Part shown: one piece after another, positions 36,757-64,000 of the stretch | Numbering within the stretch: position 1 is the first letter of the stretch | How the letters are laid out: each line of letters begins with the position of its first letter | Virus record (IMG/VR): IMGVR_UViG_3300028558_000791 | Span: 186,001-250,000 of that record | Reading direction: 5' to 3' (one strand) | Length of the DNA stretch: 64,000 nucleotides | Position numbers and translations under genes: made by a program | The notes under the pieces: generated by a model | The model's database searches: none | What the model was told of the DNA's origin: nothing | What the model saw: the letters and a program-made list of their open reading frames with translations, nothing else

Positions 36757-37218
36757 ATGCCAAAATTTTCGATAGATTACTCAGGCTTGACCAAACTAAC
36801 AAAGAAAGCATATCGTCTTGCTGATGTAAAAGATCAGTTGGAAACTGTGGCTTTTGATGTGGTTAGGTTCAAGGATAGCGACAAGGGTGCAGACCTTTGG
36901 CAGATCCAAAGCGCAGATGATGGTGATTACATCGTTGCTCTATATGATAACGAGGAAGTCGAAAAGACCGCTTCTTCCAACCCTTGGGGTGTGTTCGTGA
37001 CCAAGAATGGTTGCGACTTGCAAATATCTTACAAGGGTGACCCCCTTGTAAGATTAGCCTCAGCTAAGCTTGGTATTCCAAGTTCAGAGCTGCACAAGGC
37101 TGAGCAGTACCTACCAGAAAAACTAGCCGCTAACAAAAAGCTCGTCAAGGCTTTGTTGAGCGAGCTAAGCGAAGCAGCTAGACAAGAGGTATCAAGACGA
37201 TACCCAGAACTGGTTTAA
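36757..37218 (+). CDS. Hypothetical protein, first gene of the head module
   Basis: SD GGAG before ATG 36757; EKTAS motif. Confidence 0.75.
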   Translation: MPKFSIDYSGLTKLTKKAYRLADVKDQLETVAFDVVRFKDSDKGADLWQIQSADDGDYIVALYDNEEVEKTASSNPWGVFVTKNGCDLQISYKGDPLVRLASAKLGIPSSELHKAEQYLPEKLAANKKLVKALLSELSEAARQEVSRRYPELV

Positions 37219-37233
37219 CGGAATAGGTATTCA

Positions 37234-38832
37234 ATGAGCTTTGATAAAATACATCAACTAGTCGGTTCCTTAGCAAAAGCAGTGGACGAAAATCAAAGGA
37301 TTCCAACTCCAATTTTAGCTGCTAAGCTAGCACGTTATGTTGAAGTCTATCCTCAAGATAAAACTCTTGGATCTATGTCCAGAATTATCGACAAGATGGT
37401 CGACAACAATACAAACTTCATTCGTAAAGCCGAGCTAAAGTCGCTTTACGGAAAACTGTATCAACATGGCACTAAGGTTGCTGAGTTGCTATCAGAGGAG
37501 CTTGGCGAGACTGCCGAGCCAGAAATTACTACTTATCAGCGCGATGAAGCTGTTCAAGCCAATCCATATCACGTAGGTGATCAGGTTTTAGCTAGTGCTT
37601 TAGAGAGCGTATTCGATAAGCACCTACCACTCAAGATGTACTCACAACCAGTAGCCGAAAAAGCTATGAGATCAGTGGGTACAACTTTGGATGCTTGGAA
37701 TCTCAGACCATCTCACTTGACCGTAAGTGATGGTAACGATAAGTTCATCGTAATCAAAGCTGACTACGAAACTCCAAAGGGTGTTACTAGCTTTTACGTT
37801 CCAGTAGAAGTTACTAAGAATAATGTAGTCGAACCAGACGTATTCATGGGAAATACTGGTCCAGAAGACCTCAACCACACTACTATCAAGGCATATCTAA
37901 AGCAACAGGCCGGCACCAAGACTAAGATTGGCGCTGCTGATATCCTAACTGCTTTGACTCATGCCGCTAGTGATAAGCGTGAAGTATCTGCCGCTGAACT
38001 AGCTGTTACCCGTTTGAACGCAGAACGTCAAGGTAAGTCAGAGTTTTTCCAGGGACAAGTAGTTGGACTTAAGGTAGATGCCGCTGCTAAGGCAGATGTT
38101 GCTCTTCCAAAGTCTGATGAGTTTGTTTCTTTCGAAGATAAATTCACTACTCCACAAGGCTTGGCCTCTTGGAGATTTGGTGCAGATAAAGTTGGTACTG
38201 CTAAGGCTCACATCTCTCGTGAACTACAATCCATGGGATTTGCTACCCACCAAATAGTTGTTACTGGTAATGACGAAAACACTATTTTCTGTGGAGTCTC
38301 CTTAGACACTGGAAAAGTTGCTTTCACGGTTCCAGTCAAAGTTGCCAATGATAAACTTCAGAAACCATCTATCATGTTGTGTAATGGCTCTATCTCTAGT
38401 TTTGATAGAAAAGGTATCAACGGTTTAGTTTCTGGAAATAAGACAGATGTTAAGGTTGCCGCAGTTGCTTCTAATATGTCTTCTCTCAAGCCAAGCGAGA
38501 TTGTCAGCAATCTACGTCAAGCTCTTGCTGAAGATAATTATGCCAAGGCAGAAGATGCTCTCAACGTACTAGCAAACGCTGGTGATGAAAAGGCTTATGC
38601 CCTTGCATTCCAGCTATACATGACCGGACTAGCTGGTGTCAAAACGGCTGAGACAAAGTGCTCTAAGATGATTAAGAGTGCTAACAGCGAATACCCAATC
38701 TGTTCACACACCGGATTGCCAACCAATAAGGTTTACCAAGACAAGAGTGGATATTGCCGTCCTCTATATCGTAAGGGTATGGATGAGACTTACGAAGGTG
38801 CATCCTTTATCAACGCTAAAATATTCGGGTGA
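37234..38832 (+). CDS. Hypothetical protein, 532 aa, probably structural
   Basis: Long ORF in the head module; C-terminal Cys cluster KCSK, ICSH, YCRP. Confidence 0.8.
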   Translation: MSFDKIHQLVGSLAKAVDENQRIPTPILAAKLARYVEVYPQDKTLGSMSRIIDKMVDNNTNFIRKAELKSLYGKLYQHGTKVAELLSEELGETAEPEITTYQRDEAVQANPYHVGDQVLASALESVFDKHLPLKMYSQPVAEKAMRSVGTTLDAWNLRPSHLTVSDGNDKFIVIKADYETPKGVTSFYVPVEVTKNNVVEPDVFMGNTGPEDLNHTTIKAYLKQQAGTKTKIGAADILTALTHAASDKREVSAAELAVTRLNAERQGKSEFFQGQVVGLKVDAAAKADVALPKSDEFVSFEDKFTTPQGLASWRFGADKVGTAKAHISRELQSMGFATHQIVVTGNDENTIFCGVSLDTGKVAFTVPVKVANDKLQKPSIMLCNGSISSFDRKGINGLVSGNKTDVKVAAVASNMSSLKPSEIVSNLRQALAEDNYAKAEDALNVLANAGDEKAYALAFQLYMTGLAGVKTAETKCSKMIKSANSEYPICSHTGLPTNKVYQDKSGYCRPLYRKGMDETYEGASFINAKIFG

Positions 38833-38835
38833 ACC

Positions 38836-39663: not shown

Positions 39664-39674
39664 GAGGCTAAACT

Positions 39675-40388
39675 ATGAGAATCGCTGAACTATTAAATGC
39701 TATGGCTTCTTGGCTATCAAGCCCTAACAATGAAGCTATGTTGCTTGCTGAGTCCGATGAGAAGTGCATGCAAGTAGTGGCAGAGTCTTGTGTTCTAGCC
39801 GCTGAGCTACTCAAGAAAGCCGCTGTTGAAGTGGATACCCTTGAAGCTCCAACTGAGTCTGTTATCACTTCAGACTCCATCGAAGAGACTGCTGCTTTGG
39901 CAAACGCTTTCGATCAGTCTGGTGATCCTCAACTTAAGAGAATCGCATCCGTTCTAGACGAACTTCTTCTAACTATTGCTGCTCCACCAAACGCATACGC
40001 TGAGCGTAAGGATTTGGTTGATGCACGAGCTGATGCTCTGAAGAAGAAGTATGAGCAACCACGTGAAGACCTACACAAGTATAACCAAATTGGAAAGTCT
40101 GAGAAGGCTATTGAACAGAGTGGTTTTACTAAAGAATACAAGATTCTAGAGGCCCCACTAAGCTCACGTTACTGTCCAGATCATCCCGGCGCACAAATTG
40201 CCCGTGTTGGTGAACACATGTGGCAGTGCGATTTAGATAAGAAGACTTACAATTTTGAAACTGGATTTGAACTTGCTAATGGTTCAAAGGTGCCAGGTGG
40301 AGATGTCTCACAACAGACCAATGGTTTGGATACACCATTCCACGCCATCTTTGATACTCGTGAGGGCAGGCTCGGCTACAACAAGTGA
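39675..40388 (+). CDS. Hypothetical protein with CPDH...C motif
   Basis: 237 aa; starts MRIAELL; LANAFDQSG helical motif; RYCPDHPG...WQC. Confidence 0.75.
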   Translation: MRIAELLNAMASWLSSPNNEAMLLAESDEKCMQVVAESCVLAAELLKKAAVEVDTLEAPTESVITSDSIEETAALANAFDQSGDPQLKRIASVLDELLLTIAAPPNAYAERKDLVDARADALKKKYEQPREDLHKYNQIGKSEKAIEQSGFTKEYKILEAPLSSRYCPDHPGAQIARVGEHMWQCDLDKKTYNFETGFELANGSKVPGGDVSQQTNGLDTPFHAIFDTREGRLGYNK

Positions 40389-40402
40389 TTGATTGGTATA
40401 CA

Positions 40403-40552
40403 ATGGATCGGCATTTAGAAGAGTTTCAAGAGGCTATAGTAGAGGTTTTGTCACAGTTAGACTCGGGAATGGCTGAGCTTTTCTTAGACCGTTTCACGGA
40501 GATAATGAATGAACAAAAATGCACTCAAGAAAATTCTGGAACACCCAGATAA
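40403..40552 (+). CDS. Unlisted 49-aa ORF duplicating a C-terminal helix of the next protein
   Basis: HLEEFQEAIVEVLSQLDSGMAELFLDRFTEIM vs HISVFHDVIRDVLSQLDLESSMLFMELFQEKM (14/32 identical); no clear SD. Confidence 0.5.
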   Translation: MDRHLEEFQEAIVEVLSQLDSGMAELFLDRFTEIMNEQKCTQENSGTPR

Positions 40553-41267: not shown

Positions 41268-43189
41268 TGCCAGAGAACAAGCCTTCCAACAAACCTATTA
41301 TCGACATGCCTTCCAAGAAGCAGTTGGAGAAGGCTACTAAACCATATTCTGATGAGGAGTTAAAACTAACTCCTGAACAAGAAGAAAAGATGAAGAAGCT
41401 CATGGAGTTTTTTGATCATCATGGTGTGGATTATGGTAAGTTTATTCCTAAATTCTATTCTTACATTACTGAGAAGAAGGCTTATCCAAATTACGATCAG
41501 TATCAGCATATTGCTGGACAGCATGATATGAAGAGATGGATGCTTGCCCTAAAAGACATCCACTACAAACAGAAGGCCGGGTTCCAATATCGAGAGGCTA
41601 TCAAGACTGCGACTCAGGGTTGGGCTAAAATGGAAATCTACGATTTCTTGAACTGGGTAAAGTTTCACGAAGAAGGGGCTCACATGAAATACAAGTTTGC
41701 ACAAGTCTGGTATGAAAATGGACAGCCAGGCTATTTCTTGCACATTAAGCCAGACGCCCAGAAAGAACCTGAACCTCACTCCGATGCTAATGCTATCAAT
41801 GATGCTCGTGAAGAGTCTGAGCGTAAAGAAGAGAAAAGACAAACCATCGAGAAGCAACGTTCCAAAATTATTGGACGTTTAGATTCCGCTGAGAAGTTAC
41901 TTCGTTCCCAAGAAGGTCAAGAGTTTGCTGGTGGCGAACTAGAAAATTTGATGGAGGCTATCTATAGTCTCAAGAAGAAAGTTCAGCTTGTTAACAAGTT
42001 GAGTGTTTCTACACGCCTATACGAAGATATGATTGTTCGTGAAGGTAACGTACTAAAACGTAATGGATTCGTTAAAGCTGCCGAGGTACTATACTCGTTA
42101 GCTCAAACCCCAGGTCAAGCAGGTCAAGACGCTAAGGGTACGACTGGCCCTGGTGCAGTTCCTCCAGTCGCTCCGCCCGCCGACCCATCAGGGGCCGGCA
42201 ATCCTGGTGCTCCAGGTGGATTGCCAACACAACCACCAGGAACGCCAAGCGTTCAAACCCCAGTCGGCGGAGATCAAAATGATCCACCACAACCAAAGGG
42301 CATCAAAGATTTCATCGACAATATGAACGATGGAAATAAGACCGATGGTGATGTAACTGGTGCAGAAGATGATGAACTAGAAGTGATTGACTCAGAAGAT
42401 CAGTTGATGGTTACTGAAGCACAAATTGTACCACCACCTACTCCAGGCATTCCACCAGCAGCTTTGGAAGACGTTCCTACTACAGATGCCCCAAAGCCAG
42501 AGAGAAACCCTCCAGCATTCATTCCAGATGCAGAGGAGAAAGAACCTGGTAAACCAGGCGATCCCGGTTCTCCAGCAACCGAAGAACCACTAGAAGTTAC
42601 AGAAGATGACATTAAGCCAGGTGGTGATAAACCTGAGCCTGCTGCATCTAATTTTGACTCTAAGGTCGATGAAGTATTCAAGAGCCTCACCATCGGTGAT
42701 GTTGTAGCTAAGCTAGAAGATATCTCTAAGTCTTACAAGACTAGAGAAATGCCAAGACAATTAGGCATCGTTGATATGATGTTAGATAGCCTTGGATTGG
42801 CCTCCCTATTCCCTTCACTCTCTGAAGCTCAGAACAAAGCACTAGAGGCTAACAACTATATCTCTACTCGTGTAGACGATATTCTTGCTAAGCTACGTGG
42901 TGCAATGGCAAGTGCCGAAAAGTCTCCAGTTGCACCAGCTCCTGAGAGAGAAGATATGGCTGGCATCAGAGGCAAGCTACAAGGTGACCAAGATAAAGAG
43001 AAGCAGCGCAAGCAACAGCGTAAAGAGCAAGAAGCTGCCGAACTCGATGGTACAGGTAAAGAAGAGGGTAAGGAAACTCCAGCAGTAGAGTTGGGTGAAT
43101 TAGGTGCTCCTACCGCTCCAGCAACTCCAGGACCAGCCGCTCCTCCAACTCCACCTCCACCAGTAGTTCCAAGACCACCAGCCGTTTAA
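41267..43189 (+). CDS. Hypothetical Pro-rich protein, 640 aa, probably head-associated
   Basis: Folded blocks separated by Pro/Gly/acidic linkers; KFAQ, SLAQ, TEAQ, DDELEVID. Confidence 0.8.
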   Translation: MPENKPSNKPIIDMPSKKQLEKATKPYSDEELKLTPEQEEKMKKLMEFFDHHGVDYGKFIPKFYSYITEKKAYPNYDQYQHIAGQHDMKRWMLALKDIHYKQKAGFQYREAIKTATQGWAKMEIYDFLNWVKFHEEGAHMKYKFAQVWYENGQPGYFLHIKPDAQKEPEPHSDANAINDAREESERKEEKRQTIEKQRSKIIGRLDSAEKLLRSQEGQEFAGGELENLMEAIYSLKKKVQLVNKLSVSTRLYEDMIVREGNVLKRNGFVKAAEVLYSLAQTPGQAGQDAKGTTGPGAVPPVAPPADPSGAGNPGAPGGLPTQPPGTPSVQTPVGGDQNDPPQPKGIKDFIDNMNDGNKTDGDVTGAEDDELEVIDSEDQLMVTEAQIVPPPTPGIPPAALEDVPTTDAPKPERNPPAFIPDAEEKEPGKPGDPGSPATEEPLEVTEDDIKPGGDKPEPAASNFDSKVDEVFKSLTIGDVVAKLEDISKSYKTREMPRQLGIVDMMLDSLGLASLFPSLSEAQNKALEANNYISTRVDDILAKLRGAMASAEKSPVAPAPEREDMAGIRGKLQGDQDKEKQRKQQRKEQEAAELDGTGKEEGKETPAVELGELGAPTAPATPGPAAPPTPPPPVVPRPPAV

Positions 43190-43971: not shown

Positions 43972-45025
43972 GAAGGGATATTTTCAAGGTGGTGGCGGAG
44001 TCAACGAACCAACGCCCGGCGAAAAGAAATACAAGTCGGATCCGGCTTTGGTTGTTCAGCCGCGCTTTGAAGAACCATTTTATCGCAACTACGATTTGTA
44101 TACAATTCCTGGTATGGAGCACATCGGCCCAGGCACCGGGTACCATGGCCTACAAAATTACGATAGCGTCCAGGAATTTCTAGAAGCAAGACGCAAGAGG
44201 ATGAAGGACCGCTACGTAGCGGATGATTCCTGGCAATTAGATTCTGGCAAACGAACTAAAGAAAATCCGGGCATCAAAGCTCGTGCCGCTATTTTTGAAA
44301 GAATTATCAAGACTGCTGGACCTAATTACGATTTAGGTAAAGGGCTCTACCAAGAGATGAGTGATGGTAAGGTTGATAGTGTAGAGGAATTTAGAGAAGA
44401 AGGCAACCATGGTCCCGGCGCTCTAATGATGGCAGATGATAATGCTGACTATATGTTACCACCTAAAGAACATGGTACCAGTATCTATAATTGGAAGAAC
44501 AGTCCTTATCAAGGAACTCCTGGTGCCAAAAACAAGAAAAAGAAGAAGGATGTCAATCATATTGATTTCCCAATTGATGATGAGATTAACCATGATGGCG
44601 AGATTTATCCAAGTGAAGAATCTTACCACAAGCCAGGATTAGTCGGACCTAGTGGTATAGATAACGTTGCCACCTTCCCAGGTGAAACGGGAGCAACTGA
44701 CTTCTCATCCTACATGAATTCAACTGATATTGCTGGTGAACACTCTTATCTACCAGAGCACGACTTAATGGATAGGGGTGACGATGCCCTCAATTTTGGT
44801 CAGGATTTGGAAGATGAACAGGGCCCAGCCAGAGGGCTTCAAGATGATGACCTTCAAAAACTTTTTAATAAGTACCTAACTCCCGATGAGACCGGTTTAT
44901 TTGGACTACCAGACGGTGTAGACCCAGAGGGCCACGATGCTGACCAGACTCAACAGGTAGAAGAGCCTTTCACCGGAACTTCCGACATAGGTACTCAAAT
45001 GTATGAGGATAAGTGGAATATCTAA
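43958..45025 (+). CDS. Acidic low-complexity hypothetical protein beginning with the scaffold-repeat motif
   Basis: N-terminal KKGYFQGGGGVNEPTPGEKKY matches the repeats in 56566..60294. Confidence 0.8.
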   Translation: MSVNKKGYFQGGGGVNEPTPGEKKYKSDPALVVQPRFEEPFYRNYDLYTIPGMEHIGPGTGYHGLQNYDSVQEFLEARRKRMKDRYVADDSWQLDSGKRTKENPGIKARAAIFERIIKTAGPNYDLGKGLYQEMSDGKVDSVEEFREEGNHGPGALMMADDNADYMLPPKEHGTSIYNWKNSPYQGTPGAKNKKKKKDVNHIDFPIDDEINHDGEIYPSEESYHKPGLVGPSGIDNVATFPGETGATDFSSYMNSTDIAGEHSYLPEHDLMDRGDDALNFGQDLEDEQGPARGLQDDDLQKLFNKYLTPDETGLFGLPDGVDPEGHDADQTQQVEEPFTGTSDIGTQMYEDKWNI

Positions 45026-46822: not shown

Positions 46823-46836
46823 GTGCTTTGCACTTA
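46820..46836. terminator. Short palindrome joining two convergent stop codons; possible bidirectional terminator
   Basis: taagtgc-ttt-gcactta: 7-bp stem whose arms contain both stop codons. Confidence 0.35.
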
Positions 46837-56565: not shown

Positions 56566-59500
56566 ATGCCCATTATTAAACTAGGCGAAGCCCACGAAAT
56601 TAAACTGGAGAACATGGAGTCATGTCTTCCTGAAGTGAGTGCTGAGGTCTTAGATAACTTTAGGAAGTTTGCAACCAATCTAAAGAAGATTGCTCCTAAA
56701 GCTGAAGACTTCCTCTATTTCTCTGCTGTTATGATGCATGCTGCTGAAGCATCTGCGCTTAACGAAGATGGTACACCAAAGCTAACCCTCAAAGGCGAAC
56801 CAGTCCAAGTAGGATGGGATACTAGTGGTGGTACATGGAAATGGGCATCTAATGACCCTAACATTAAGCCATATAAGAATTCTAATGGAGACATATTTCC
56901 AGAAGCAGAATTAACCAAAGCTTACAAGAAGTGGAAGCACAAGCCTCTATGCGTGGATCATAAATCGAGTTCGGTTGACCATGTTAGAGGTTTTATCGTT
57001 GATACTTATTACGACCGCTCACTCAAGAGAGTGATTGCATTGTGCGCCTTAGATAAGGCCGGATTCCCTCAATTAGCTAGACAAATTTCAACAGGCGTTT
57101 CTAACTGTGTATCCATGGGTACAGCAGTAGGAAGAGCCATCTGTTATGACTGCGGTAGAGTCGCTCGTGCTGAGCAAGACTTCTGCGCTCATATGAAGAA
57201 CAAGACTTGCTACGGTGAAATCAACGTAGACCTCAATCCAATTGAGTTATCTATCGTTGTAAATGGTGCAGACCCTAGAGCCAACATCAAACACATCATC
57301 GCCGCAGCAAACACAATGAACACTTACCTAGAGAATCGCGCTAAGGAACTAGAAAAAATAGCCGACCTCAAGTTTAGTGCTCAATTCAGTGTGTCAGATC
57401 TTAATGGTGACGAAGGTGGAGGAAGTGCTCAATTTAATGTTGATGCTACTGACATTAACCAGTTCAAGAGCGAATTAGACGAAGCATTCCGCAAAGTCCA
57501 AGAGTTCAAGAATGTAAAAATTTCTGAAAAAGATACTAATTCTACAGCATCTAATCAGACGTCGGGTTCGATCGCCATGGATGAAGGTGCACCCACGGAT
57601 TCTGGATTGGCTCTCCAAACTCCGCAAGCCATTAGGCTTGCATCCGCTGATGTAGAGGCGGAATCATTGGCTGAGCTTCAGCAAGTAACTGCATCAATTG
57701 AAGCTACGTTAGGTCAAATGAAGAAGAGCTTGGATAAGTTAGCAAAAACTTCTACTACTAAAAAACAAGAGGAAAACATGTCTGGATCAAAAGAAATCAA
57801 TAAGCAAGCTTATTTCCAGGGTGGCGGTGGCGTTAATGAACCAACTCCAGGCCAAGTTAAATATCCAAAGGACGGTCTTAACGAGCAACTTCGTGAACAC
57901 GAAGATAAGCACATGACCGGTCAACCACCTTTCCCTGAGGTTGGTCCAGTGGATGGAATGCATCCTTCTCCAGCTTCGGCTGATCCTTCTGACGAGCTTG
58001 CTCGTAAGAAGATGCTCGCTAGAGCAGAAGCAGAAGAGCGTGCCCTCAAGCGTAACGCCATTGTCAATATGGCCAAGGACGCATTGAAGAGCAAGGAAGC
58101 TTACTACCTCGGTGGTGGCGGTGTAAACGAGCCAACTCCAGGTAAAGTAAAGTATCCAAAAGACAAGCTCAACGAAGAGCTACGTGACTACGAAGATAAG
58201 CACATGGTTGGACAGCCTCCATTCCCAGGTGTTGGTCCAGTCGACGGCATGCACCCTTCTCCATCATCTGCTGATCCAAAGGATGAATTGAAGCGTAAGC
58301 AAATGCTCGCTCGTGCACAACTACGTGCCAGATTTGTCAAGGCCGCTAACAGTAACGGCACTCAGAACAGAGCCAGAAGCGCTTGGGAAGTATTCCTTGG
58401 TGACAAGCTATTGTTGACCGCATCTGTTGACGAACTCTCCGGTGGAAACACTGACGTTCTATATGACTCAATTGCTACTAAGGACTTCGGAGCCAAGTTG
58501 ATCGAAAAGGTCAAAGTTCAAGGCGCTGATGCAGTAAGCAAGCTAATTAAGAAAGCCCAAGGCGCTCCAGGCGCACCACCAGCCGGCCCTCCAGCAGGTG
58601 ATCCATCCAGTGCTCCACCTCCAGGCGGTGACATGGGTGCAGGCGCTCCAGATGCTGGTCCTCCAGCAGAAGACGCAGGCAAGTCTGGTGACCCAAAGCA
58701 AAGCGCAGTAGAACTCGCTGAGAAGGTAAGAGACCTAAGCTCTGACCTAGTAGAAGCAGTTCGTGCCCTAACCGGTGAACAAGCCGAAATGGGTGGCGCA
58801 GGCCCAGCACCAGATGCAGGTGGAGTTGGTGGCCCAGCCGGTGGTCCAATGGCCGCTGATGACCAGGATGCAAAGAAGAAGAAAGACTCTATGGAGTCCT
58901 CTGCTAACTTTAGCACCTCAACTCTCAACACCTTGAGAAAAGAATTGAATGGCGCACTTACTCATGCAATGAAGGAAGCTATTGCAGAGCTAACCGAACA
59001 CCAGCAAGAATTAGACATGATTGCCGGTATGTACGACAAGGGTGCTGTAACTCAATCTAACCAAGACTTTGTTGGAACTATCGTAGAAGACGCATTGAGC
59101 GAAGCTAAGACTGCTGTTGCAGACGGCTTTAAGCTAATGACCGCCTTCGTCAAGTATGCTCGTGGTACCAAGGCAATTGTCAAGCGTGCTGAGATTGAAT
59201 CAGAACTTGAATCACTAGCCGATGGAGACACTATGAGCGACAAGAAGGACAGTCACTCCGCAGACGGCGGTGACTTGATGGGACTAATTAATGACACCAA
59301 TGCAGACTTGGACGCAGTTCAAGAGATGATGGGTGACGACCAGGATCACGATCTTGGCGGTGAACTTGATGGCGATGGCCTAGCTGGACTCTTTGAAGAG
59401 GGTGGCGAAGGTGAAGAACATGGTCACGAGGAACCACTATTCGAAGGTTTGGCTGACGACAACGATCTCACTTTTGAACAAGGTGAGAAAGTACCACCAG

Positions 59501-60294
59501 AGTTGGCCGGAAAGAAGTTAACTATGGCATCATTTGATGATAGAGCAGGCCGTGCAGCTCTCAGGGCCAAGTTGGCTGCTGACGCTCTCGGAAAAGAAGA
59601 CGACGGAGAAGTTCAGGATATGTCCAAGCAAAAGTGGAGCGATATGCTAGATGCTGCTGACAAGCACTCTGACGGTCAAACCGAATTGGACGTCAAGCCA
59701 TCCGACAGCCTCGGATTGGTTGAGACCCTACCAGAAGTAAACAAGGCCATGATGGACGTTGCTAAAGCTCCACCAAAGGTTCGTAAGGAAGCAGAAGTAA
59801 TTCAGAGATTAGTTTCTGAAGGCAAGCTTGATCCAAATGATGTTGATGCACTCGCATCTTACGGATTGGATAAAGAAGCCGTTGCTTACTGGAAGAAGTA
59901 CTTCGGTGAAGTTGATGGTGGCAGTGAATTCGCCAGTGAGATGGTGAAGGAACATGTCAAGGCAGCTATGGAAGAAGAACTAAACACCTTCAGAGTCAAG
60001 CTAGCCCGTGCTTACGAACTAACTTACGATATGGTTGACCGTGGCCTATGCCGTCACGACAGAGTCACCATCTCTGATCAAGTTGACCAGATTATGAGAT
60101 TTAACGATGATGCATTCGAATCCTTGAAGAAGGTCGTTGCCCGTCATGAACCAGGTAATCTACGCAAGTCTGCTGGCGCAATGCCACAGGTTGGTCTCAG
60201 AGTTGACGGAGAATTCTCTCCAGCTCAAGCAGTCGAGGATGACTCTTATACCCAATTGTCAAGCCTCTTTGGTAACAAAAAGGGTGTGTTCTAA
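56566..60294 (+). CDS. Prohead protease-scaffold polyprotein, 1242 aa
   Basis: N-terminal NSNGDIFPEAEL..AY..W..KPLCVDH...VRGFIVD...VSMG...CYDCG...CAH...PIELSIVVNGADPRA resembles herpes-fold phage maturation proteases with a zinc insert; long repeat, acidic and helical C-terminal part; lies after portal. Confidence 0.75.
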   Translation: MPIIKLGEAHEIKLENMESCLPEVSAEVLDNFRKFATNLKKIAPKAEDFLYFSAVMMHAAEASALNEDGTPKLTLKGEPVQVGWDTSGGTWKWASNDPNIKPYKNSNGDIFPEAELTKAYKKWKHKPLCVDHKSSSVDHVRGFIVDTYYDRSLKRVIALCALDKAGFPQLARQISTGVSNCVSMGTAVGRAICYDCGRVARAEQDFCAHMKNKTCYGEINVDLNPIELSIVVNGADPRANIKHIIAAANTMNTYLENRAKELEKIADLKFSAQFSVSDLNGDEGGGSAQFNVDATDINQFKSELDEAFRKVQEFKNVKISEKDTNSTASNQTSGSIAMDEGAPTDSGLALQTPQAIRLASADVEAESLAELQQVTASIEATLGQMKKSLDKLAKTSTTKKQEENMSGSKEINKQAYFQGGGGVNEPTPGQVKYPKDGLNEQLREHEDKHMTGQPPFPEVGPVDGMHPSPASADPSDELARKKMLARAEAEERALKRNAIVNMAKDALKSKEAYYLGGGGVNEPTPGKVKYPKDKLNEELRDYEDKHMVGQPPFPGVGPVDGMHPSPSSADPKDELKRKQMLARAQLRARFVKAANSNGTQNRARSAWEVFLGDKLLLTASVDELSGGNTDVLYDSIATKDFGAKLIEKVKVQGADAVSKLIKKAQGAPGAPPAGPPAGDPSSAPPPGGDMGAGAPDAGPPAEDAGKSGDPKQSAVELAEKVRDLSSDLVEAVRALTGEQAEMGGAGPAPDAGGVGGPAGGPMAADDQDAKKKKDSMESSANFSTSTLNTLRKELNGALTHAMKEAIAELTEHQQELDMIAGMYDKGAVTQSNQDFVGTIVEDALSEAKTAVADGFKLMTAFVKYARGTKAIVKRAEIESELESLADGDTMSDKKDSHSADGGDLMGLINDTNADLDAVQEMMGDDQDHDLGGELDGDGLAGLFEEGGEGEEHGHEEPLFEGLADDNDLTFEQGEKVPPELAGKKLTMASFDDRAGRAALRAKLAADALGKEDDGEVQDMSKQKWSDMLDAADKHSDGQTELDVKPSDSLGLVETLPEVNKAMMDVAKAPPKVRKEAEVIQRLVSEGKLDPNDVDALASYGLDKEAVAYWKKYFGEVDGGSEFASEMVKEHVKAAMEEELNTFRVKLARAYELTYDMVDRGLCRHDRVTISDQVDQIMRFNDDAFESLKKVVARHEPGNLRKSAGAMPQVGLRVDGEFSPAQAVEDDSYTQLSSLFGNKKGVF
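57802..58317 (+). repeat. Two 225-nt (75-aa) direct repeats in the scaffold region
   Basis: 57802-58026 KQAYFQGGGGVNEPTPG...KKMLARA and 58093-58317 KEAYYLGGGGVNEPTPG...KQMLARA; many synonymous differences. Confidence 0.95.
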
Positions 60295-60318
60295 AGCTAA
60301 CCTAGAACGAGGATACAA

Positions 60319-61029
60319 ATGAAAAACCAGAGCGTATCAGATTTTGTAGCCGCAACTATGAATGCGGTGCTAAACAGCAAAGAACACAAGTCGTTGTTCG
60401 ATGTTCAATACAAGTATGCACAAGACATGAGTGATGCAAAAGACTCTTGTGGCAAGTGCGGATCTAAACACGGCGATGCAGATAGCTGCATGGCTGATGA
60501 TGACGACAATGACGCCCGTAAGGCTAAGAAGGATTCTGACTCAGACTCCTCTAGTGCTTGGGATGATGACAATGATGCTCGTAAGAAGAAGGATTCCGAT
60601 TCTGATTCCAGCGATGCAGATGATGATGAGAACGATGCCCGTAAGAAGAAGGACTCTGATTCTGACTCCAGCTCTGCTGATGACGATCTAGAAGTTTCTG
60701 CTGCATTCGACGTAGCTATCGACAGCTTGCTAACTGCATCTGCCGCTCTTGACTCCGTTGGTCTCGGTCGTGGTTCCTCACTTACCTTGAAGATTGCTTC
60801 TTTGGTTGTTGAAGCCAAGAAGAAGGACAAGGATTCCAAGAAGGACAAGAAGAAGAGTGACTCTCAATCTGCCAAGGACAAGAAGTCCAATCCATTCGCT
60901 AAGAAGAAGGATGACAAGAAGAAGAGTGACGACAAGAAGAAGAGCGATTCTCATTCTGCAAAGGATAAGAAGAGTGATTCTAAGTCTTCTAAAGACTCTA
61001 AGAAGCCAGCTTCTAAATCTTCCAAGTAA
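60319..61029 (+). CDS. Asp/Ser/Lys-rich low-complexity protein with helical A..LD..G module
   Basis: Three D-rich NDARKKKDSDSDSS-type repeats, K/D/S-rich tail, SD GAGGA. Confidence 0.8.
   Translation: MKNQSVSDFVAATMNAVLNSKEHKSLFDVQYKYAQDMSDAKDSCGKCGSKHGDADSCMADDDDNDARKAKKDSDSDSSSAWDDDNDARKKKDSDSDSSDADDDENDARKKKDSDSDSSSADDDLEVSAAFDVAIDSLLTASAALDSVGLGRGSSLTLKIASLVVEAKKKDKDSKKDKKKSDSQSAKDKKSNPFAKKKDDKKKSDDKKKSDSHSAKDKKSDSKSSKDSKKPASKSSK
60493..60687 (+). repeat. Three imperfect tandem repeats encoding (A)DDDxNDARKKKDSDSDSS
   Basis: About 60-66-nt units with synonymous variation. Confidence 0.85.
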
Positions 61030-61037
61030 GGATAACA

Positions 61038-61253
61038 ATGTACAAACAAAGCAGTTTTGAGGACGAACTCTATCGTTCGATGGAGAAGACTATAGTCAAA
61101 AATCAAACCGAAGATAAGCACGGTTTCAATAAGCTAGCTCAAGCTGCTGACCTTTTGAATGCGGCGGCCGATATTTTCGACCGTGCTGGTATGCAAGAGG
61201 AGTCGAAAGACGTTACTAATATTCTAGAAGAACTAGCTAAGGATCTCAAATGA
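61038..61253 (+). CDS. Small protein paralogous to the N-terminus of the next gene
   Basis: SFEDELYRSME...AADLLNAAADIFDRAG vs LFEDELVASME...AAECLHAALEIFEEQG; SD AAGGA. Confidence 0.8.
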   Translation: MYKQSSFEDELYRSMEKTIVKNQTEDKHGFNKLAQAADLLNAAADIFDRAGMQEESKDVTNILEELAKDLK

Positions 61254-62170
61254 GTAAAAGTCTATTTGAAGATGAATTAGTTGCTAGCATGGAGAGCCAG
61301 TTGCGCAAGCAGGGGTCGGCCGAGAAGCCAGCCCTTACTAAAGCTGCTGAGTGCCTCCATGCTGCTCTAGAAATTTTCGAAGAGCAGGGCCTGACCGCAA
61401 GAGCGGATCAGGTACTGCAACTTCTACAGAAGATTGCGCAAACCAACGAAGCACGTGACGTTCAGCAAATGCCATCAGTTCACAAACTAATGGAAGCTGG
61501 ATTGACTCAGCGTGATATGCATGAATTTGCTAAAGGCAGTCCAATTGCCAAGGCTAAATTCAATATGGTTCTGCGTGGTTTGGGATATTCTGATCATCAG
61601 ATTGGCAAGTTCATTGGTCCAACTAATGTTATGTCCGAAGATGATGCCAAGCAAGTTCTTGACCCAAATCGTTCATTCAGCAAGATTTATGACTGGATGA
61701 AGAACCCAGGCAAGCCAGTTGATCCAAGGAACCCACAGCCAGGTGAAGAGTTTTCTATCAAGAGCCTTCCAGTTACTGGTCCTGGCGATACTTTGCAGTT
61801 TGAGAGTCTCAAGCCAAAGCCAACTCAAGTTCCAAAAGACGAAGCTCTTGAGTTCAAGAGCATTGCTCAAAAAAAAAGATCAAATCTGACTGATCGTCAC
61901 ACCCATGGTCTAACTCCTGAAAAAGAAGTTGAGAACCTAAAGCATCACGGCACTCCTTTCAATATGGCTGATGATGTTCCTCTTCCATTTGATAGACACA
62001 ACGTCAAAGAGAAAGACGTCGATCCTGATTTTGCTGAGTTACTTAACTCACCAACGTTTGATCTTGATGCCTCTGACGATGAGTTAATGGGGATTGAAAT
62101 TAAAGATGATACTCTAGAAGTCTTTGATAACGATGGCCATATTGAGGATTTTGAAGACGAAAGAGATTAA
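61250..62170 (+). CDS. Hypothetical head-associated protein
   Basis: 306 aa; KIAQ, SIAQ, acidic tail DDTLEVFD. Confidence 0.8.
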   Translation: MSKSLFEDELVASMESQLRKQGSAEKPALTKAAECLHAALEIFEEQGLTARADQVLQLLQKIAQTNEARDVQQMPSVHKLMEAGLTQRDMHEFAKGSPIAKAKFNMVLRGLGYSDHQIGKFIGPTNVMSEDDAKQVLDPNRSFSKIYDWMKNPGKPVDPRNPQPGEEFSIKSLPVTGPGDTLQFESLKPKPTQVPKDEALEFKSIAQKKRSNLTDRHTHGLTPEKEVENLKHHGTPFNMADDVPLPFDRHNVKEKDVDPDFAELLNSPTFDLDASDDELMGIEIKDDTLEVFDNDGHIEDFEDERD

Positions 62171-62221
62171 TTCAAACGTTATATAGGGTACTAGAGCTGT
62201 ATAGGTGAAATAAGGACACTA

Positions 62222-62911
62222 ATGCTAAGACTAGTACAAGTGGGTAACACGTTACCCGTCAGTTTCATTTGCGACCCATCCGCAGAATTTCAACCTGGAC
62301 AGGTTGCTGAATTAACCGTTATTGGTAACCAGGTAATGGCTACCGTCAGTAATGGTACCGCACCTATTGGTATTATTGATGATATCAAAACCAAAGCTTT
62401 CTCCAACGTTTCTTGGAATGAAACTGTTATTGTTCCCGCTGTAGGCGTACTAGGACCAAATAATACATTAGTTACTCCAGTTGATATTAAAGCCGAACTA
62501 AGGAAGCCAAATATTATTCCATCCAGCTTCAATTCTACAGTTAATGTAGTTTTGAATCCTGTGAATGGAATTATTACTTTTGTAGCTGGCACTCCATTAA
62601 ATATTGATTTGTCTGGTACTGGACAACCAAATGCTATTAAAGCAATTGTCAATTATACTTATCAAGTAGCTAATATTCCAGGAGATGACAGCACTGCTGG
62701 TTCTGGTAGAATGACTGTATGGTTTGAGAGAATGTTTTTCCAAACCGACCAGTACGAAACCAATCAACAGTACCCTGTCCGTGCTAACTTATACGTTTCT
62801 GAAGCGGGCTTCTTGACTACTCGTAGGCCAAGTCCGATTCATCCTGCTGTTGGTATGGTTACTGCGCCTCCTACTCCGATGAACCCAATGATCGAAATCT
62901 TGTGGTTCTAA
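62222..62911 (+). CDS. Probable head decoration/cement-like beta protein
   Basis: FQPGQVAEL...APIGIIDD...DDSTAGSGRMTVW...TDQY...LYVS..GFLTT...VGMVTAPP; typical position upstream of a major capsid gene. Confidence 0.55.
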   Translation: MLRLVQVGNTLPVSFICDPSAEFQPGQVAELTVIGNQVMATVSNGTAPIGIIDDIKTKAFSNVSWNETVIVPAVGVLGPNNTLVTPVDIKAELRKPNIIPSSFNSTVNVVLNPVNGIITFVAGTPLNIDLSGTGQPNAIKAIVNYTYQVANIPGDDSTAGSGRMTVWFERMFFQTDQYETNQQYPVRANLYVSEAGFLTTRRPSPIHPAVGMVTAPPTPMNPMIEILWF

Positions 62912-63000
62912 ACCCCTTAGAATAGCTGCATATTCTTTTATTTAGTAGAAGCTTTCTATAATATCGCATATTGTAGACAATCTACTCAATTGAGGCCATA

Positions 63001-64000
63001 ATGACTTTTAAACACATGAAATTCGAGGATTCTCCGACTATGCGTGCCTTAGAGAAGGTCGCTAAGGAAAAGGGCCTAGTCAAACCAGAGACTCTGGAAA
63101 AGAAAGCCTCAGTTACAAAGAAGGCAGACTACTCACCAACGCACGATCTCATGGAGAACATTCTAAAGCTATGTGCCGGTTTGAGAACTCAAGGTCTTGC
63201 TAAAGAAGCTTCTGAAATTGAAACTAACTTCCTAAACTATAAACAAGCGCAAACTCTTTATGAAACTTCTAAGGAGAAGGGCGAAGACTTAGTTGACTCT
63301 GCTCATCCTAAGGGAAGCCACAAGCTAGAGGGTGTCGAAGGTGACGAAGCTACGTTCGAGACTATCGTTGACCAACACTTAAAGAATCTAGAAATGATTA
63401 GCAAGAAGCCAACTGGTAAGTTATCTAATGCTTCTATTTTATCTTCTGTCAAGAAGGCTTTAGGTCAGGTAACTGCTCCTCAAGAATCAGAATCAGATTT
63501 ATACAATACCATGAACCAAAGATTGAATAAGCTTCTTGCCGATCTTGGTGCAGTAATTTCCGTATTGAAATTAGATGGTGGGCCAGATTATGATACTGAA
63601 GGTGCCGATGCTGGTGCCGATGCTCTAAGAGCTGCTGTAGCCGCCAGACCATTTACCAGAGATAAGTATCGTGCCGCTATGGCCGCTCTAAATCAGATTC
63701 AAAATACATCAAAGAGTGGTGCTTATAAAACAAGCGAATGGTTTGGTAGTCCAGATGCAAATGATCCTGGCCTCGCGGCTTGGAACAAGCGTGCAGGCGG
63801 TATGATGGGTAAACTAGTTAATAACTTGCGTTCCATCGAGCCATTAATTTCCAAGATTGAAAACATCAGAGTTCTTAAAGAGCAAGGAACTTATCAAAGC
63901 CCGGAAGATGCGGCTAAGAAAAATACAATCACTCTTCCAGAACAAACTCTAGTTTCTGATCCATTAGTTGTAAAGCTACAAAATTTAGTTAACCAACTCA
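63001..64000 (+). CDS. Hypothetical head-module protein, 3' truncated (not in the ORF track)
   Basis: SD GAGG, ATG 63001, frame read open to the window end: MTFKHMKFEDSPTMRALEKVAKEKGLVK...KQAQTLYE...AHPKGSHKL. Confidence 0.8.
   Translation, partial: MTFKHMKFEDSPTMRALEKVAKEKGLVKPETLEKKASVTKKADYSPTHDLMENILKLCAGLRTQGLAKEASEIETNFLNYKQAQTLYETSKEKGEDLVDSAHPKGSHKLEGVEGDEATFETIVDQHLKNLEMISKKPTGKLSNASILSSVKKALGQVTAPQESESDLYNTMNQRLNKLLADLGAVISVLKLDGGPDYDTEGADAGADALRAAVAARPFTRDKYRAAMAALNQIQNTSKSGAYKTSEWFGSPDANDPGLAAWNKRAGGMMGKLVNNLRSIEPLISKIENIRVLKEQGTYQSPEDAAKKNTITLPEQTLVSDPLVVKLQNLVNQL

What the first reader, a model, noticed from the sequence alone, without database searches (positions are those of the whole stretch)
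36757..64000. K-x-A(Q) motif recurring through head-module proteins: candidate novel prohead-protease site
Examples by gene start: KTAS (36757), KTAE (37234), KFAQ and SLAQ (41267), KTAG (43958), STAQ, KTAA, KTAQ (45094), KTAQ (46178), KLAQ, KEAG (51334), KVAK, KFAA (54132), KIAD, RLAS, KQAY, KEAY, KKAQ, KSAG (56566), KYAQ (60319), KLAQ (61038), KIAQ, SIAQ (61250), KKAS, KKAD, KQAQ (63001). Many sit at the border of folded and low-complexity segments. T4 gp21 and phiKZ gp175 process many head proteins at short Glu-ending motifs. Here a basic-x-Ala specificity would mark a large set of packaged proteins. K and A are common residues, so a statistical test is needed.
Basis: partly seen in the sequence, partly recalled or inferred. 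Interest (0 to 1): 0.7.

Follow-up and report, generated by a model that had tools for sequence, protein, structure and literature searches.

The report
Basic-x-Ala head protease cleavage motif
A short Lys-x-Ala-(Gln/Ser/Gly/Ala) signature is selectively conserved in the head-assembly proteins of this 481-kb phage and over-represented in the head modules of distant relatives such as phage G; it most likely marks where a herpesvirus-like capsid protease cuts, a specificity I found described for no phage.

Summary
By counting alone the window signal is modest: K.A is 84 against 66 expected, K.AQ is 11 against 2.8. Conservation and replication make it strong.

Across 27 head-region proteins aligned to up to about 100 related IMG/VR loci, K.A is the most co-conserved of 243 gapped residue pairs (37 of 87 sites; p 1e-6).

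The motif is strongly over-represented in the head modules of four distant relatives, in proteins with no detectable similarity to the window's:
- phage G, z 6.9
- an uncultured 485-kb phage, z 6.4
- Rctr197k, z 3.1
- Gordonia phage Stormageddon, z 9.2 with Lys or Arg

Neighbouring non-head genes and permuted motifs are mostly flat.

The 1242-aa protein at 56566-60294 begins with a protease domain of the herpesvirus assemblin / T4 gp21 fold, fused to a scaffold-like remainder. K-x-A sites flank the protease domain, and another lies 39 residues from the C-terminus, like herpesvirus R and M sites.

Cleavage itself is inferred, not shown. Several listed sites are chance, and not every gene in the span is a head gene.

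The parts
56566..60294 (+). Protease-scaffold polyprotein (1242 aa, P0001)
   Evidence: Residues 105-213 hit phrog_18299 head maturation protease, E 2e-13. It is 34% identical to phage G gp19. 200 cluster representatives match at E<=1e-30, mostly 1100-1300 aa fusions.
56674..57354 (+). Protease domain (about residues 37-263); His132 (56959) and Ser183 (57112) invariant
   Evidence: AF2 model pLDDT 87. VIA-align: VZV protease Z 11.2, T4 gp21 Z 10.5; the top 36 entries are all herpesvirus proteases or gp21. H132 and S183 are invariant, phage G gp19 included.
56665..56676 (+). KFAT, site 34: N-terminal flank of the protease domain
   Evidence: K34 and A36 at least 90% conserved. Aligns with K43-T-A-A of phage G gp19. 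A K-x-A lies about 14 aa before DFLY in 69 of 73 family members.
57355..57366 (+). KIAD, site 264: C-terminal flank of the protease domain (R-site-like)
   Evidence: K 92%, A 84%, middle residue variable. Phage G gp19 has KVAS at 248. Less regular in the family: 53 of 73 have a site within 70 aa.
57634..57645 (+). RLAS, site 357, in the scaffold part
   Evidence: R 91%, A 96%, S 89%, middle residue variable.
58549..58560 (+). KKAQ, site 662: end of a conserved domain, directly before an Ala/Pro/Gly-rich linker
   Evidence: K 97%, A 80%, Q 84%, x variable (K35 S28 N9 R8 %).
59569..59580 (+). KLAA, site 1002, in the scaffold part
   Evidence: Both K and A at least 80% conserved; following residue A in 89%.
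60166..60177 (+). KSAG, site 1201: 39 residues before the C-terminus (M-site-like)
   Evidence: K 88%, A 81%, G 92%, x variable. 132 of 138 family members have [KR].A in the last 60 aa (shuffle 76), mostly K-x-A-S with about 38 aa remaining. Stormageddon gp13 has KTAG 40 aa from its end.
51340..51351 (+). KLAQ, site 3 of the 411-aa protein after the portal
   Evidence: K 97%, A 93%, Q 86%, x variable; protein mean identity 42%; followed by an indel-prone stretch.
51796..51807 (+). KEAG, site 155 of the same protein
   Evidence: K 94%, A 96%, G 71%.
54600..54611 (+). KFAA, site 157 of the 250-aa protein
   Evidence: K 98%, A 98%, A 90%; x fully variable (N45 C17 T12 S9 %).
60412..60423 (+). KYAQ, site 32 of the highly charged 236-aa protein: end of a conserved 34-aa N-terminal segment
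   Evidence: K 93%, A 96%; next residue S 53%, Q 16%. Conservation collapses after the site.
60790..60801 (+). KIAS, site 158 of the same protein
   Evidence: K and A at least 80% conserved, S 94%.
61131..61142 (+). KLAQ, site 32 of the 71-aa protein
   Evidence: K 80% (R in others), A 86%; fourth residue K or Q.
61430..61441 (+). KIAQ, site 61 of the 306-aa protein: end of the conserved N-terminal segment
   Evidence: K 89%, A 75% (G in others). Borderline.
63100..63111 (+). KKAS, site 34 of the 408-aa protein (63001-64227, runs out of the window)
   Evidence: K 91%, A 89%, S 60% / A 25%, x variable.
63241..63252 (+). KQAQ, site 81 of the same protein
   Evidence: K 100%, A 93%, Q 69%, x variable. 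Lies within a conserved helical region.
36964..36975 (+). KTAS, site 78 of the 161-aa protein
   Evidence: [KR].A kept in 83% of 24 relatives; S or A follows.
38452..38463 (+). KVAA, site 407 of the 532-aa protein
   Evidence: [KR]-x-A-A kept in all 26 relatives with x variable (V, A, M, I, T).
39813..39824 (+). KKAA, site 47 of the 237-aa protein
   Evidence: K-x-A-A in 27 of 27 relatives, x = K, N or S.
41693..41704 (+). KFAQ, site 143 of the 640-aa protein
   Evidence: K 100%, A 100%, Q 86%.
42095..42106 (+). SLAQ, site 277 of the same protein, just before its Pro/Gly-rich region
   Evidence: S 96%, A 96%, Q 93%, x variable. Ser takes the place of Lys.
44309..44320 (+). KTAG, site 118 of the 355-aa protein
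   Evidence: K 95%, A 95%, G 80%, x variable.
45106..45117 (+). STAQ, site 5 of the 360-aa protein
   Evidence: S 100%, A 100%, Q 100%, x variable.
45877..45888 (+). KTAQ, site 262 of the same protein: between a variable region and the conserved C-terminal domain
   Evidence: K 68%, A 68%, Q 96%. Partly conserved.
47412..49295 (+). Large terminase (context; its KGAQ at 433 is not conserved)
   Evidence: phrog_675 E 5e-61. Relatives read KGPG or KGPN at that site.
49376..51253 (+). Portal protein (context; KYAQ at 317 lies in the conserved core and is probably structural)
   Evidence: phrog_16240 E 1e-49. 33% identical to phage G gp14. Local conservation 0.93.

Best explanation
The N-terminal roughly 230 residues of the 1242-aa protein at 56566-60294 form a serine protease of the herpesvirus-assemblin / T4 gp21 fold, fused to a long scaffold-like remainder. 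I propose it is built into the prohead through that remainder. I propose it then cuts after Ala in motifs of the form (hydrophobic)-(hydrophobic)-Lys-x-Ala | Gln/Ser/Gly/Ala, with Arg or Ser sometimes replacing Lys.

Predicted cuts:
- It frees itself at K34-F-A and K264-I-A.
- It fragments the scaffold part at 357, 662 and 1002.
- It severs the last 39 residues at K1201-S-A|G, as the herpesvirus M site does.
- It trims or fragments several other proteins of the region: 36733, 37234, 39675, 41267, 43958, 45094, 51334, 54132, 60319, 61038, 61250 and 63001.

Shown here: the motif is present, it is selectively conserved, it is over-represented in head modules of distant relatives, and the protease has this fold with an invariant His and Ser.

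Inferred: that the motif is cut at all, that the scissile bond follows Ala, and that the C-terminal tail binds the capsid protein.
For: 1. Unbiased conservation. K.A is first of 243 gapped pairs: 37 of 87 co-conserved (p 1e-6) and 17 of 87 with a variable middle residue (p 2e-7). Control proteins (tail, TerL, upstream) give 2 of 19.

2. Linkage of the three positions. Of 72 conserved Ala-[QSAG] dipeptides, 20 have Lys two residues before, against about 5 expected, and all 20 Lys are conserved. The two residues before the Lys are hydrophobic.

3. Replication in distant relatives. Only portal, protease and capsid protein are blastp-similar between the window phage and phage G, so the other sites are independent.
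- Phage G head module: K.A[QSAG] 29 against 8.8 (z 6.9); K-hydrophobic-A-[QSAG] 20 against 3.2 (z 9.6). It still reaches z 5.1 without gp7.
- Phage G control regions: the hydrophobic form gives z 0.05 and 1.2. The broad form gives z 0.5 in one region but z 3.6 in the other.
- LR745208: upstream of the capsid gene 34 against 12.3 (z 6.4); downstream 8 against 6.9.
- Rctr197k: 15 against 7.3 upstream; 4 against 6.1 downstream.
- Stormageddon gp8-15: [KR].A[QSAG] 48 against 15 (z 9.2); neighbouring genes 6 against 5.2.
- Permuted motifs are mostly flat.

4. Protease-scaffold family. In 137 full-length representatives K.A[QSAG] is 1042 against 490 (z 28), while permuted forms run at 0.73-0.96 of expectation. 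K.A ranks 2nd of 400 pairs.

5. Anatomy. Sites flank the protease domain in this phage and in phage G gp19 (residues 9, 43, 248, 274). A site about 38 aa from the C-terminus is found in 132 of 138 family members. In pseudorabies virus the R site is YLQA-T and the M site VQA-S, the latter removing 37 residues (PMC4498786).

6. Fold. VZV protease Z 11.2, T4 gp21 Z 10.5. PHROG head maturation protease, E 2e-13.

7. Negative control. In phiKZ head proteins K.A[QSAG] reaches only z 1.4, and phiKZ's own proven motif [SAG].E reaches only z 2.1.
Against: - There is no direct evidence of cleavage for any member of this lineage. I could not read the one paper most likely to hold it (Gonzalez et al. 2020 on phage G).
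- Within this window the excess by count is modest: p 0.01-0.03 against the genome's own baseline.
- The genome has a general 1.2-1.5-fold excess of K.A[QEKA], typical of helices.
- One phage G control region shows the broad motif at z 3.6, so head specificity is not clean for that form.
- Some conserved K-x-A sites lie inside well-conserved, probably folded regions (portal 317; P0001 863, 873, 1074) and are unlikely to be cut.
- Site 3 of 51334 would release only five residues.
- The border-of-domain pattern is not significant overall (p 0.35).
- The capsid protein's candidate site (KYAA, 24-27) is not kept in Rctr197k. Phage G's capsid protein lacks that N-terminal segment altogether.
- The site C-terminal to the protease domain is irregular across the family.
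Confidence: 0.62

Rival explanations
1. The motif is functional but is not a cleavage site. It could be a short docking or targeting signal, recognised by the scaffold, the capsid shell, the portal or a chaperone, that directs proteins into the prohead. Its link with the protease family would then reflect a shared assembly system rather than the protease's specificity.
For: - Conservation and head-module enrichment show selection, not proteolysis.
- Several sites sit near N-termini (51334 site 3, 45094 site 5, 67938 site 12), where targeting sequences are found in T4 (own knowledge).
- Some conserved sites lie inside folded regions.
Against: - Up to 8-11 copies occur in single scaffold-like proteins: phage G gp7, LR745208's 422-aa protein, Stormageddon gp13. 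That fits fragmentation better than targeting.
- Sites bracket the protease domain and lie about 38 aa from the scaffold's C-terminus, where assemblin-type proteases cut.
- A small residue or Gln after Ala, and the alternating pattern K-x-A, fit an extended substrate strand.
Confidence: 0.18
2. Only the protease-scaffold polyprotein is processed at K-x-Ala (self-release and scaffold removal). The instances in the other head-region proteins are structural helix motifs or chance, so the motif does not mark a large set of packaged proteins.
For: - The strongest and most regular evidence is inside the protease-scaffold family.
- In the window, counts outside that protein are small.
- The genome-wide baseline excess of K.A[QEKA] points to a helical bias.
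Against: - Phage G's excess persists after removing gp7 and gp19: 16 against 6.4, z 4.0; hydrophobic form z 5.4.
- In the window, conserved sites with a variable middle residue occur in 12 other proteins.
Confidence: 0.12
3. Chance and composition. Lys, Ala and Gln are common helix formers, the reader picked examples after the fact, and nothing functional is there.
For: - Broad motif counts in the window are not significant: [KR].A[QSA] z 1.7.
- Several listed sites are not conserved.
- The border test is negative.
Against: - K.A ranks first of 243 pairs for co-conservation.
- Four distant genomes replicate the excess in non-homologous proteins, with mostly flat permuted and neighbouring-gene controls.
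- z 28 in 137 family members.
- phiKZ negative control.
Confidence: 0.05

Closest known systems
Herpesvirus assemblin and its scaffold (HSV/PrV pUL26, HCMV pUL80a; MEROPS S21)
   Same: - Same fold: VZV protease Z 11.2, PRV 10.4, HSV-2 9.1, HCMV 8.7.
- The protease is the N-terminal domain of a protease-scaffold polyprotein.
- Ala comes before the cut and Ser or Thr after it.
- One site directly follows the protease domain (R site, YLQA-T). One lies near the scaffold's C-terminus (M site, VQA-S, removing 37 residues in PrV; PMC4498786). Here the corresponding site lies 38-39 residues from the end.
   Different: - The conserved determinant here is Lys (or Arg) two residues before Ala. Herpesvirus sites have a hydrophobic residue at the third or fourth position before the cut.
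- Gln, Gly and Ala are accepted after the cut.
- Many more candidate substrates.
- The third catalytic residue is not identified (herpesviruses use Ser-His-His).
- A bacterial virus, with no sequence-level similarity: no PDB hit by sequence.
T4 gp21 prohead protease (Peptidase S77)
   Same: - Same fold: Z 10.5 over 128 residues.
- Processes many head proteins (capsid protein, scaffold core, internal proteins with N-terminal targeting peptides) at one short motif (own knowledge; reviewed in PMC5694885).
   Different: - T4 cuts after Glu in Leu/Ile-x-Glu; here Ala follows a basic residue.
- gp21 is not fused to a long scaffold.
- No Pfam S77 match here.
phiKZ gp175 / SPN3US gp245 giant-phage prohead proteases
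   Same: A giant phage in which a short three-residue motif recurs through many head and ejection proteins and defines propeptides (PMC5694885, PMC10052503).
   Different: - Their motif is (Ser/Ala/Gly)-x-Glu or Ala-x-Glu.
- In phiKZ head proteins K.A[QSAG] is not enriched (z 1.4).
- Unrelated capsid protein family.
Bacillus/Lysinibacillus phage G gp19 (candidate prohead protease) and gp27 capsid protein
   Same: - Nearest cultured relative: capsid protein 54%, protease domain 34%, portal 33% identical.
- Its head module shows the same motif, with sites flanking the gp19 protease domain.
   Different: - gp19 is only 300 aa, so the scaffold is not fused.
- Ser, Gly or Ala follow the Ala far more often than Gln.
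- gp27 lacks the 44-residue N-terminal segment of the window phage's capsid protein.
P2 gpO and Mu gpI protease-scaffold fusions
   Same: Phage proteins with an N-terminal serine protease and a C-terminal scaffold that process themselves, the capsid protein and the portal (own knowledge).
   Different: Much shorter proteins. No shared motif known to me. Not compared by tools here.

Membership tests
Assemblin-fold prohead serine proteases (herpesvirus S21, T4 S77, HK97 S78, phiKZ S80) | Characteristic fold of the catalytic domain | tested here: met
   AF2 model pLDDT 87. Foldseek's top hits are the EBV and VZV proteases and T4 gp21. VIA-align Z 8-11.2, and all top 36 entries are of this family.
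Assemblin-fold prohead serine proteases (herpesvirus S21, T4 S77, HK97 S78, phiKZ S80) | Conserved catalytic His and Ser, in that order | tested here: inconclusive
   His132 and Ser183 are invariant in 20 sequences including phage G gp19 and in 44 diverse representatives. Their spacing of 51 residues is like T4's. I did not superpose them on the catalytic residues of a solved structure. The third residue (Asp205 or His209) is undecided.
Assemblin-fold prohead serine proteases (herpesvirus S21, T4 S77, HK97 S78, phiKZ S80) | Sequence match to a curated family model | tested here: inconclusive
   No Pfam match at E<=0.01 and no PDB match by sequence. PHROG phrog_18299 'head maturation protease' matches at E 2e-13. 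tblastn hits include annotated prohead / capsid maturation proteases of Rhodococcus phage E3 and Gordonia phage Stormageddon.
Assemblin-fold prohead serine proteases (herpesvirus S21, T4 S77, HK97 S78, phiKZ S80) | Gene placed between portal and major capsid protein genes | tested here: met
   Portal 49376-51253, protease fusion 56566-60294, capsid protein at genome 256223-257236 (window-equivalent 70223-71236).
Prohead-protease cleavage motif (as in T4 L/I-x-E, phiKZ S/A/G-x-E) | Recurs in head proteins above chance and not in other proteins | tested here: met
   Window: modest. Relatives: strong and mostly head-specific, although one phage G control region shows the broad motif at z 3.6. Protease-scaffold family z 28.
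Prohead-protease cleavage motif (as in T4 L/I-x-E, phiKZ S/A/G-x-E) | Motif residues conserved at orthologous positions while the unspecified position varies | tested here: met
Prohead-protease cleavage motif (as in T4 L/I-x-E, phiKZ S/A/G-x-E) | Mature virion proteins begin (or end) at the motif | not testable with these tools
   No virion peptide data were reachable. Supplements of PMC12484599 are not held. Gonzalez et al. 2020 is not held.
Prohead-protease cleavage motif (as in T4 L/I-x-E, phiKZ S/A/G-x-E) | Cleavage depends on the phage protease | not testable with these tools
   Needs an enzyme assay or a protease mutant.
Herpesvirus-type R-site / M-site architecture | [quoted passage not shown] | tested here: inconclusive
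   Position met: KSAG 39 aa from the end; 132 of 138 family members have a site in the last 60 aa, typically K-x-A-S with about 38 aa remaining. Binding of the tail to the capsid protein is not shown.
Herpesvirus-type R-site / M-site architecture | Site directly after the protease domain | tested here: inconclusive
   Present here (K264-I-A, conserved) and in phage G gp19 (K248-V-A-S). Only 53 of 73 family members have one within 70 aa.

The most novel reading that the evidence does not exclude
A very large, ancient lineage of tailed phages shares one maturation-protease specificity, basic-x-Ala | small/Gln. The lineage runs from 135-kb actinophages through phage G to 450-500-kb environmental megaphages, and is defined by this protease and capsid protein family. 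The specificity would be homologous in logic and geometry to the herpesvirus assemblin R and M sites: Ala before the cut, Ser after it, and a tail of 37-39 residues removed from the scaffold. The herpesvirus Ala|Ser specificity and protease-scaffold architecture would then predate the split between herpesviruses and tailed phages. The motif would also allow the packaged and processed head proteome of uncultured megaphages to be read from sequence alone.
Probability: 0.4. Interest if true: 0.8.

Novelty: new variant of a known kind. Interest (0 to 1): 0.62.

Why it matters
Prohead-protease specificities are known for only a few phages: T4, the phiKZ group, HK97. A recent structural survey of actinophage capsid proteins states that the cleavage site cannot be predicted (bioRxiv 10.1101/2022.09.09.507160).

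If basic-x-Ala is the cut site of this protease family, three things follow:
- Mature ends of head proteins could be predicted for hundreds of actinophages, for phage G and for uncultured huge phages.
- Packaged or ejected proteins could be picked out of long runs of unknown genes.
- It would add a specific functional link (Ala before the cut, R-like and M-like sites) between phage and herpesvirus capsid maturation, beyond the shared fold.

It is cheaply testable, because cultivable relatives and virion mass-spectrometry data already exist.

Tried and rejected
- First structure prediction of the protease domain, from 19 close relatives, was unusable (pLDDT 44). It was replaced by a 44-sequence alignment.
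- Sequence searches of the PDB with the protease domain or its profile found nothing.
- Complex prediction of the capsid protein with the last 58 residues of the protease-scaffold protein gave no answer (score 0.05). It is not evidence either way.
- The conservation-asymmetry test of the 'border' claim was negative (p 0.35).
- PaBG: the paper reports about 20% mass loss of its capsid protein and multiple cleaved virion proteins (PMC7412058). Its capsid protein N-terminus has no K-x-A, and the genome is too distant and scattered to use.
- The capsid protein's KYAA (24-27) was considered as a propeptide site. It is not kept in Rctr197k, and the K-x-A sites in LR745208's capsid protein fall in the conserved N-arm, so I make no claim for the capsid protein.
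- PDB 6WKK (phage G gp27, 280 of 282 residues deposited) gives no information on processing.
- Literature searches found no report of this specificity. Gonzalez et al. 2020 (J Mol Biol 432:4139) could not be read, so prior description for phage G cannot be excluded.
- megablast of the terminase-portal DNA against phage records found nothing.

Full report
**Setting.** The window is bases 186001-250000 of a single 480,838-bp contig with 43% G+C. It is a huge phage.

I called 685 ORFs with a simple longest-ORF procedure, so start codons are approximate.
- a CCA-adding enzyme, 43198-43971
- an HNH endonuclease, 46834-47385, minus strand
- the large terminase, 47412-49295
- the portal, 49376-51253
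- a protein with a transglycosylase-like start, 52571-53719
- a tyrosine-phosphatase-like protein, 54881-55651

The major capsid protein lies just outside the window, at genome 256223-257236 (phrog_2522, E 3e-81). Most other ORFs match no family. The span is therefore a head-assembly region with some unrelated genes in it, not a pure head module.

**The protease.** The 1242-aa product of 56566-60294 (P0001) matches a PHROG 'head maturation protease' over residues 105-213 (E 2e-13). It is 34% identical to phage G gp19.

A structure predicted from 44 diverse homologues (pLDDT 87) aligns best with herpesvirus proteases and T4 gp21. VZV protease scores Z 11.2, T4 gp21 Z 10.5, pseudorabies virus protease Z 10.4, and all top 36 entries belong to that family. 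His132 and Ser183 are invariant, phage G included.

An exhaustive search found 1465 relatives, 200 of them at E<=1e-30. Most are fusions of 1100-1300 aa with the same build. The nearest cultured relative of the phage is phage G: capsid protein 54%, portal 33% identical.

Counting gives a mixed answer.
- K.A is 84 against 66 expected, and [KR].A[QSA] 27 against 19. Neither is convincing.
- K.AQ is 11 against 2.8. It ranks 7th of 8000 motifs of that shape, is robust to local shuffling, and is unmatched by 35 other arrangements of the three letters.
- The rest of the genome also has a mild excess of K.A followed by Gln, Glu, Lys or Ala, as helices do. Against that baseline the head-region excess is only p 0.01-0.03.

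**Conservation settles it.** I fetched 191 related loci from IMG/VR and mapped each window protein onto them by tblastn.
- Over 27 head-region proteins, K.A is the most co-conserved of all 243 gapped residue pairs tested. 37 of 87 sites have both residues at least 80% conserved (background 20%, p 1e-6). 17 of 87 also have a variable middle residue (background 4.4%, p 2e-7). The runner-up reaches only p 0.004.
- Control proteins (tail, terminase, upstream genes) give 2 of 19.
- Of 72 conserved Ala-(Gln/Ser/Ala/Gly) pairs, 20 are preceded at two residues' distance by Lys, against about 5 expected. All 20 Lys are conserved, and the two residues before them are mostly Leu, Tyr, Val or Ile.
- KTAE (37234), KTAA (45094), KTAQ (46133) and KKAD (63001) do not pass.

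**Replication in distant genomes.** Only portal, protease and capsid protein are detectably similar between this phage and phage G, so motif instances elsewhere are independent.

| Genome | Region | Motif | Observed vs expected | z |
|---|---|---|---|---|
| Phage G | first 30 kb (terminase to capsid gene) | K.A[QSAG] | 29 vs 8.8 | 6.9 |
| Phage G | same | K-hydrophobic-A-[QSAG] | 20 vs 3.2 | 9.6 |
| Phage G | same, without gp7 | K.A[QSAG] | 20 vs 7.1 | 5.1 |
| Phage G | same, without gp7 and gp19 | K.A[QSAG] | 16 vs 6.4 | 4.0 |
| Phage G | two 50-kb control regions | K-hydrophobic-A-[QSAG] | 5 vs 4.9; 7 vs 4.5 | 0.05; 1.2 |
| Phage G | same control regions | K.A[QSAG] | 13 vs 11.3; 24 vs 11.7 | 0.5; 3.6 |
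| LR745208 (uncultured, 485 kb) | 20 kb upstream of capsid gene | K.A[QSAG] | 34 vs 12.3 | 6.4 |
| LR745208 | 20 kb downstream | K.A[QSAG] | 8 vs 6.9 | 0.5 |
| Rctr197k | upstream | K.A[QSAG] | 15 vs 7.3 | 3.05 |
| Rctr197k | downstream | K.A[QSAG] | 4 vs 6.1 | -0.9 |
| Gordonia phage Stormageddon (GC-rich) | gp8-15 | [KR].A[QSAG] | 48 vs 15 | 9.2 |
| Stormageddon | gp16-21 | [KR].A[QSAG] | 6 vs 5.2 | 0.3 |

Permuted motifs are mostly flat, with one exception: K..A[QSAG] reaches z 3.7 upstream in Rctr197k. The second phage G control region is also not flat for the broad motif.

In 137 full-length protease-scaffold representatives K.A[QSAG] occurs 1042 times against 490 expected (z 28). Permuted forms run at or below expectation, and K.A ranks 2nd of 400 pairs, after Pro.Pro.

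As a control, phiKZ head proteins show no clear excess (z 1.4). phiKZ's own proven motif reaches only z 2.1 by the same method.

**Anatomy.**
- In P0001 conserved sites lie at 34 (KFA|T) and 264 (KIA|D), bracketing the protease domain.
- Further sites lie at 357 (RLA|S), at 662 (KKA|Q, exactly where a conserved domain gives way to an Ala/Pro/Gly-rich linker) and at 1002 (KLA|A).
- The last lies at 1201 (KSA|G), 39 residues from the end.
- Phage G gp19 has sites at 9, 43, 248 and 274 of 300 residues.
- Across the family, 132 of 138 members have a site in the last 60 residues (76 expected by shuffling). It is most often K-x-A-S, with about 38 residues left. Stormageddon gp13 has KTA|G 40 residues from its end.

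This mirrors herpesvirus pUL26. Its protease is released at an R site (YLQA-T in pseudorabies virus). Its scaffold is detached from the capsid protein at an M site (VQA-S) that removes 37 residues (PMC4498786).

In the small, highly charged protein at 60319 and in the protein at 61250, the motif ends a conserved N-terminal segment, after which conservation collapses. That is what a propeptide boundary would look like.

**Interpretation.** The best reading is that basic-x-Ala followed by a small residue or Gln is the recognition motif of this protease family, with the cut after Ala.

Shown: the presence, selective conservation and head-module association of the motif, and the fold and conserved His/Ser of the enzyme.

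Inferred: cleavage itself, the scissile bond, and the role of the C-terminal tail.

Points against:
- There are no peptide data.
- Counts within the window are modest.
- One phage G control region is not flat for the broad motif.
- Some conserved sites lie inside folded regions and are probably structural (portal 317; P0001 863, 873, 1074).
- The border pattern is not significant overall.
- The capsid protein's own candidate site is not conserved in a distant relative.

I put 0.62 on the protease-site reading. I put 0.18 on a functional but non-proteolytic motif, 0.12 on processing limited to the protease-scaffold protein, and 0.05 on chance.

**Comparison and novelty.** A short motif recurring through many giant-phage head proteins is known from T4 (Leu/Ile-x-Glu) and the phiKZ group (Ser/Ala/Gly-x-Glu; PMC5694885, PMC10052503). 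The enzyme fold is the known assemblin / gp21 fold.

What appears new is the specificity, basic-x-Ala, which resembles the herpesvirus Ala|Ser sites more than any phage motif. Its span is also new: actinophages, phage G and uncultured megaphages.

I found no description of it in the papers I could search. One survey states that actinophage capsid cleavage sites cannot be predicted. I could not read Gonzalez et al. 2020 on phage G, so prior knowledge for that phage cannot be excluded.

I rate it a new variant of a known kind, interest 0.62. The decisive test is a semi-specific re-search of existing phage G virion mass-spectrometry data.

Noticed in passing
window 57793-57840 and 58084-58131 (P0001 residues about 410-425 and 507-522); window 43973-44020 (start of the 43958 protein): A module 'K-x-A/G-Y-F/Y-Q/L-G-G-G-G-V-N-E-P-T-P-G ... 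K-Y' occurs twice in the protease-scaffold protein, within two tandem repeats of about 97 aa. It occurs once more at the N-terminus of the 355-aa protein at 43958 (blastp 46% over 61 aa). It is almost invariant in relatives. Function unknown; possibly a shared docking element. It also explains the excess of Tyr after K-x-A in the family.
   Followed up: partly
window 51050-51250 (portal C-terminus); 42130-42500 and 43090-43189 (41267 protein); 52170-52330 (51334 protein); 58560-58700 (P0001): Long Pro/Ala/Gly-rich low-complexity stretches at the ends of, or between, domains of several head-region proteins. The portal's last roughly 70 residues are one example. They make G.PP and P.PP the most enriched tetrapeptide patterns of the region. 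Phage G's portal has a similar tail.
   Followed up: no
window 54881-55651: A 256-aa protein with the C-x5-R signature matches tyrosine / dual-specificity phosphatase families (PF13350 E 6e-8, PF22784 E 1e-7). It lies inside the head-assembly gene run, so it could be a packaged enzyme. It has no conserved K-x-A site.
   Followed up: no
window 60319-61029: A 236-aa protein built mostly of acidic and basic low complexity, with three copies of a unit like D-D-D-N-D-A-R-K-K-K-D-S-D-S-D-S-S and a Lys/Ser/Asp-rich tail. Only the first 34 residues and residues about 128-170 are conserved. It looks like an internal head or DNA-associated protein.
   Followed up: partly
genome 256223-257236 (L001:7223-8236), outside the window: The major capsid protein carries a 44-residue N-terminal segment that is absent from phage G gp27 and from LR745208's capsid protein, but present in Rctr197k and aligned in PaBG and Lu11. 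Whether it is removed at maturation is open. PaBG's capsid protein loses about 20% of its mass (PMC7412058).
   Followed up: partly
window 43198-43971 (+) and genome 257859-259103 (-), window-equivalent 71859-73103: Two CCA-adding / tRNA nucleotidyltransferase-like genes on opposite strands flank the head-assembly region. They are weakly similar to each other (22% over 202 aa; phrog_2244).
   Followed up: no
window 46834-47385 (-): An HNH endonuclease-like, Cys-rich ORF on the opposite strand lies immediately upstream of the large terminase gene. This arrangement is known from other phages, where HNH proteins assist terminase (own knowledge).
   Followed up: no
genome 263998-271016 (window-equivalent 77998-85016): Two adjacent large proteins (567 and 1755 aa) share many internal repeats (blastp 53-73% identity between repeat units). 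They are probably fibre or decoration proteins with tandem domains.
   Followed up: no
protein family of P0001: Some family members (1400-1670 aa) carry the protease domain from about residue 450-490 instead of at the N-terminus. The alignment is split into two stretches, so an extra domain or an insertion precedes or interrupts the protease in part of the family.
   Followed up: no
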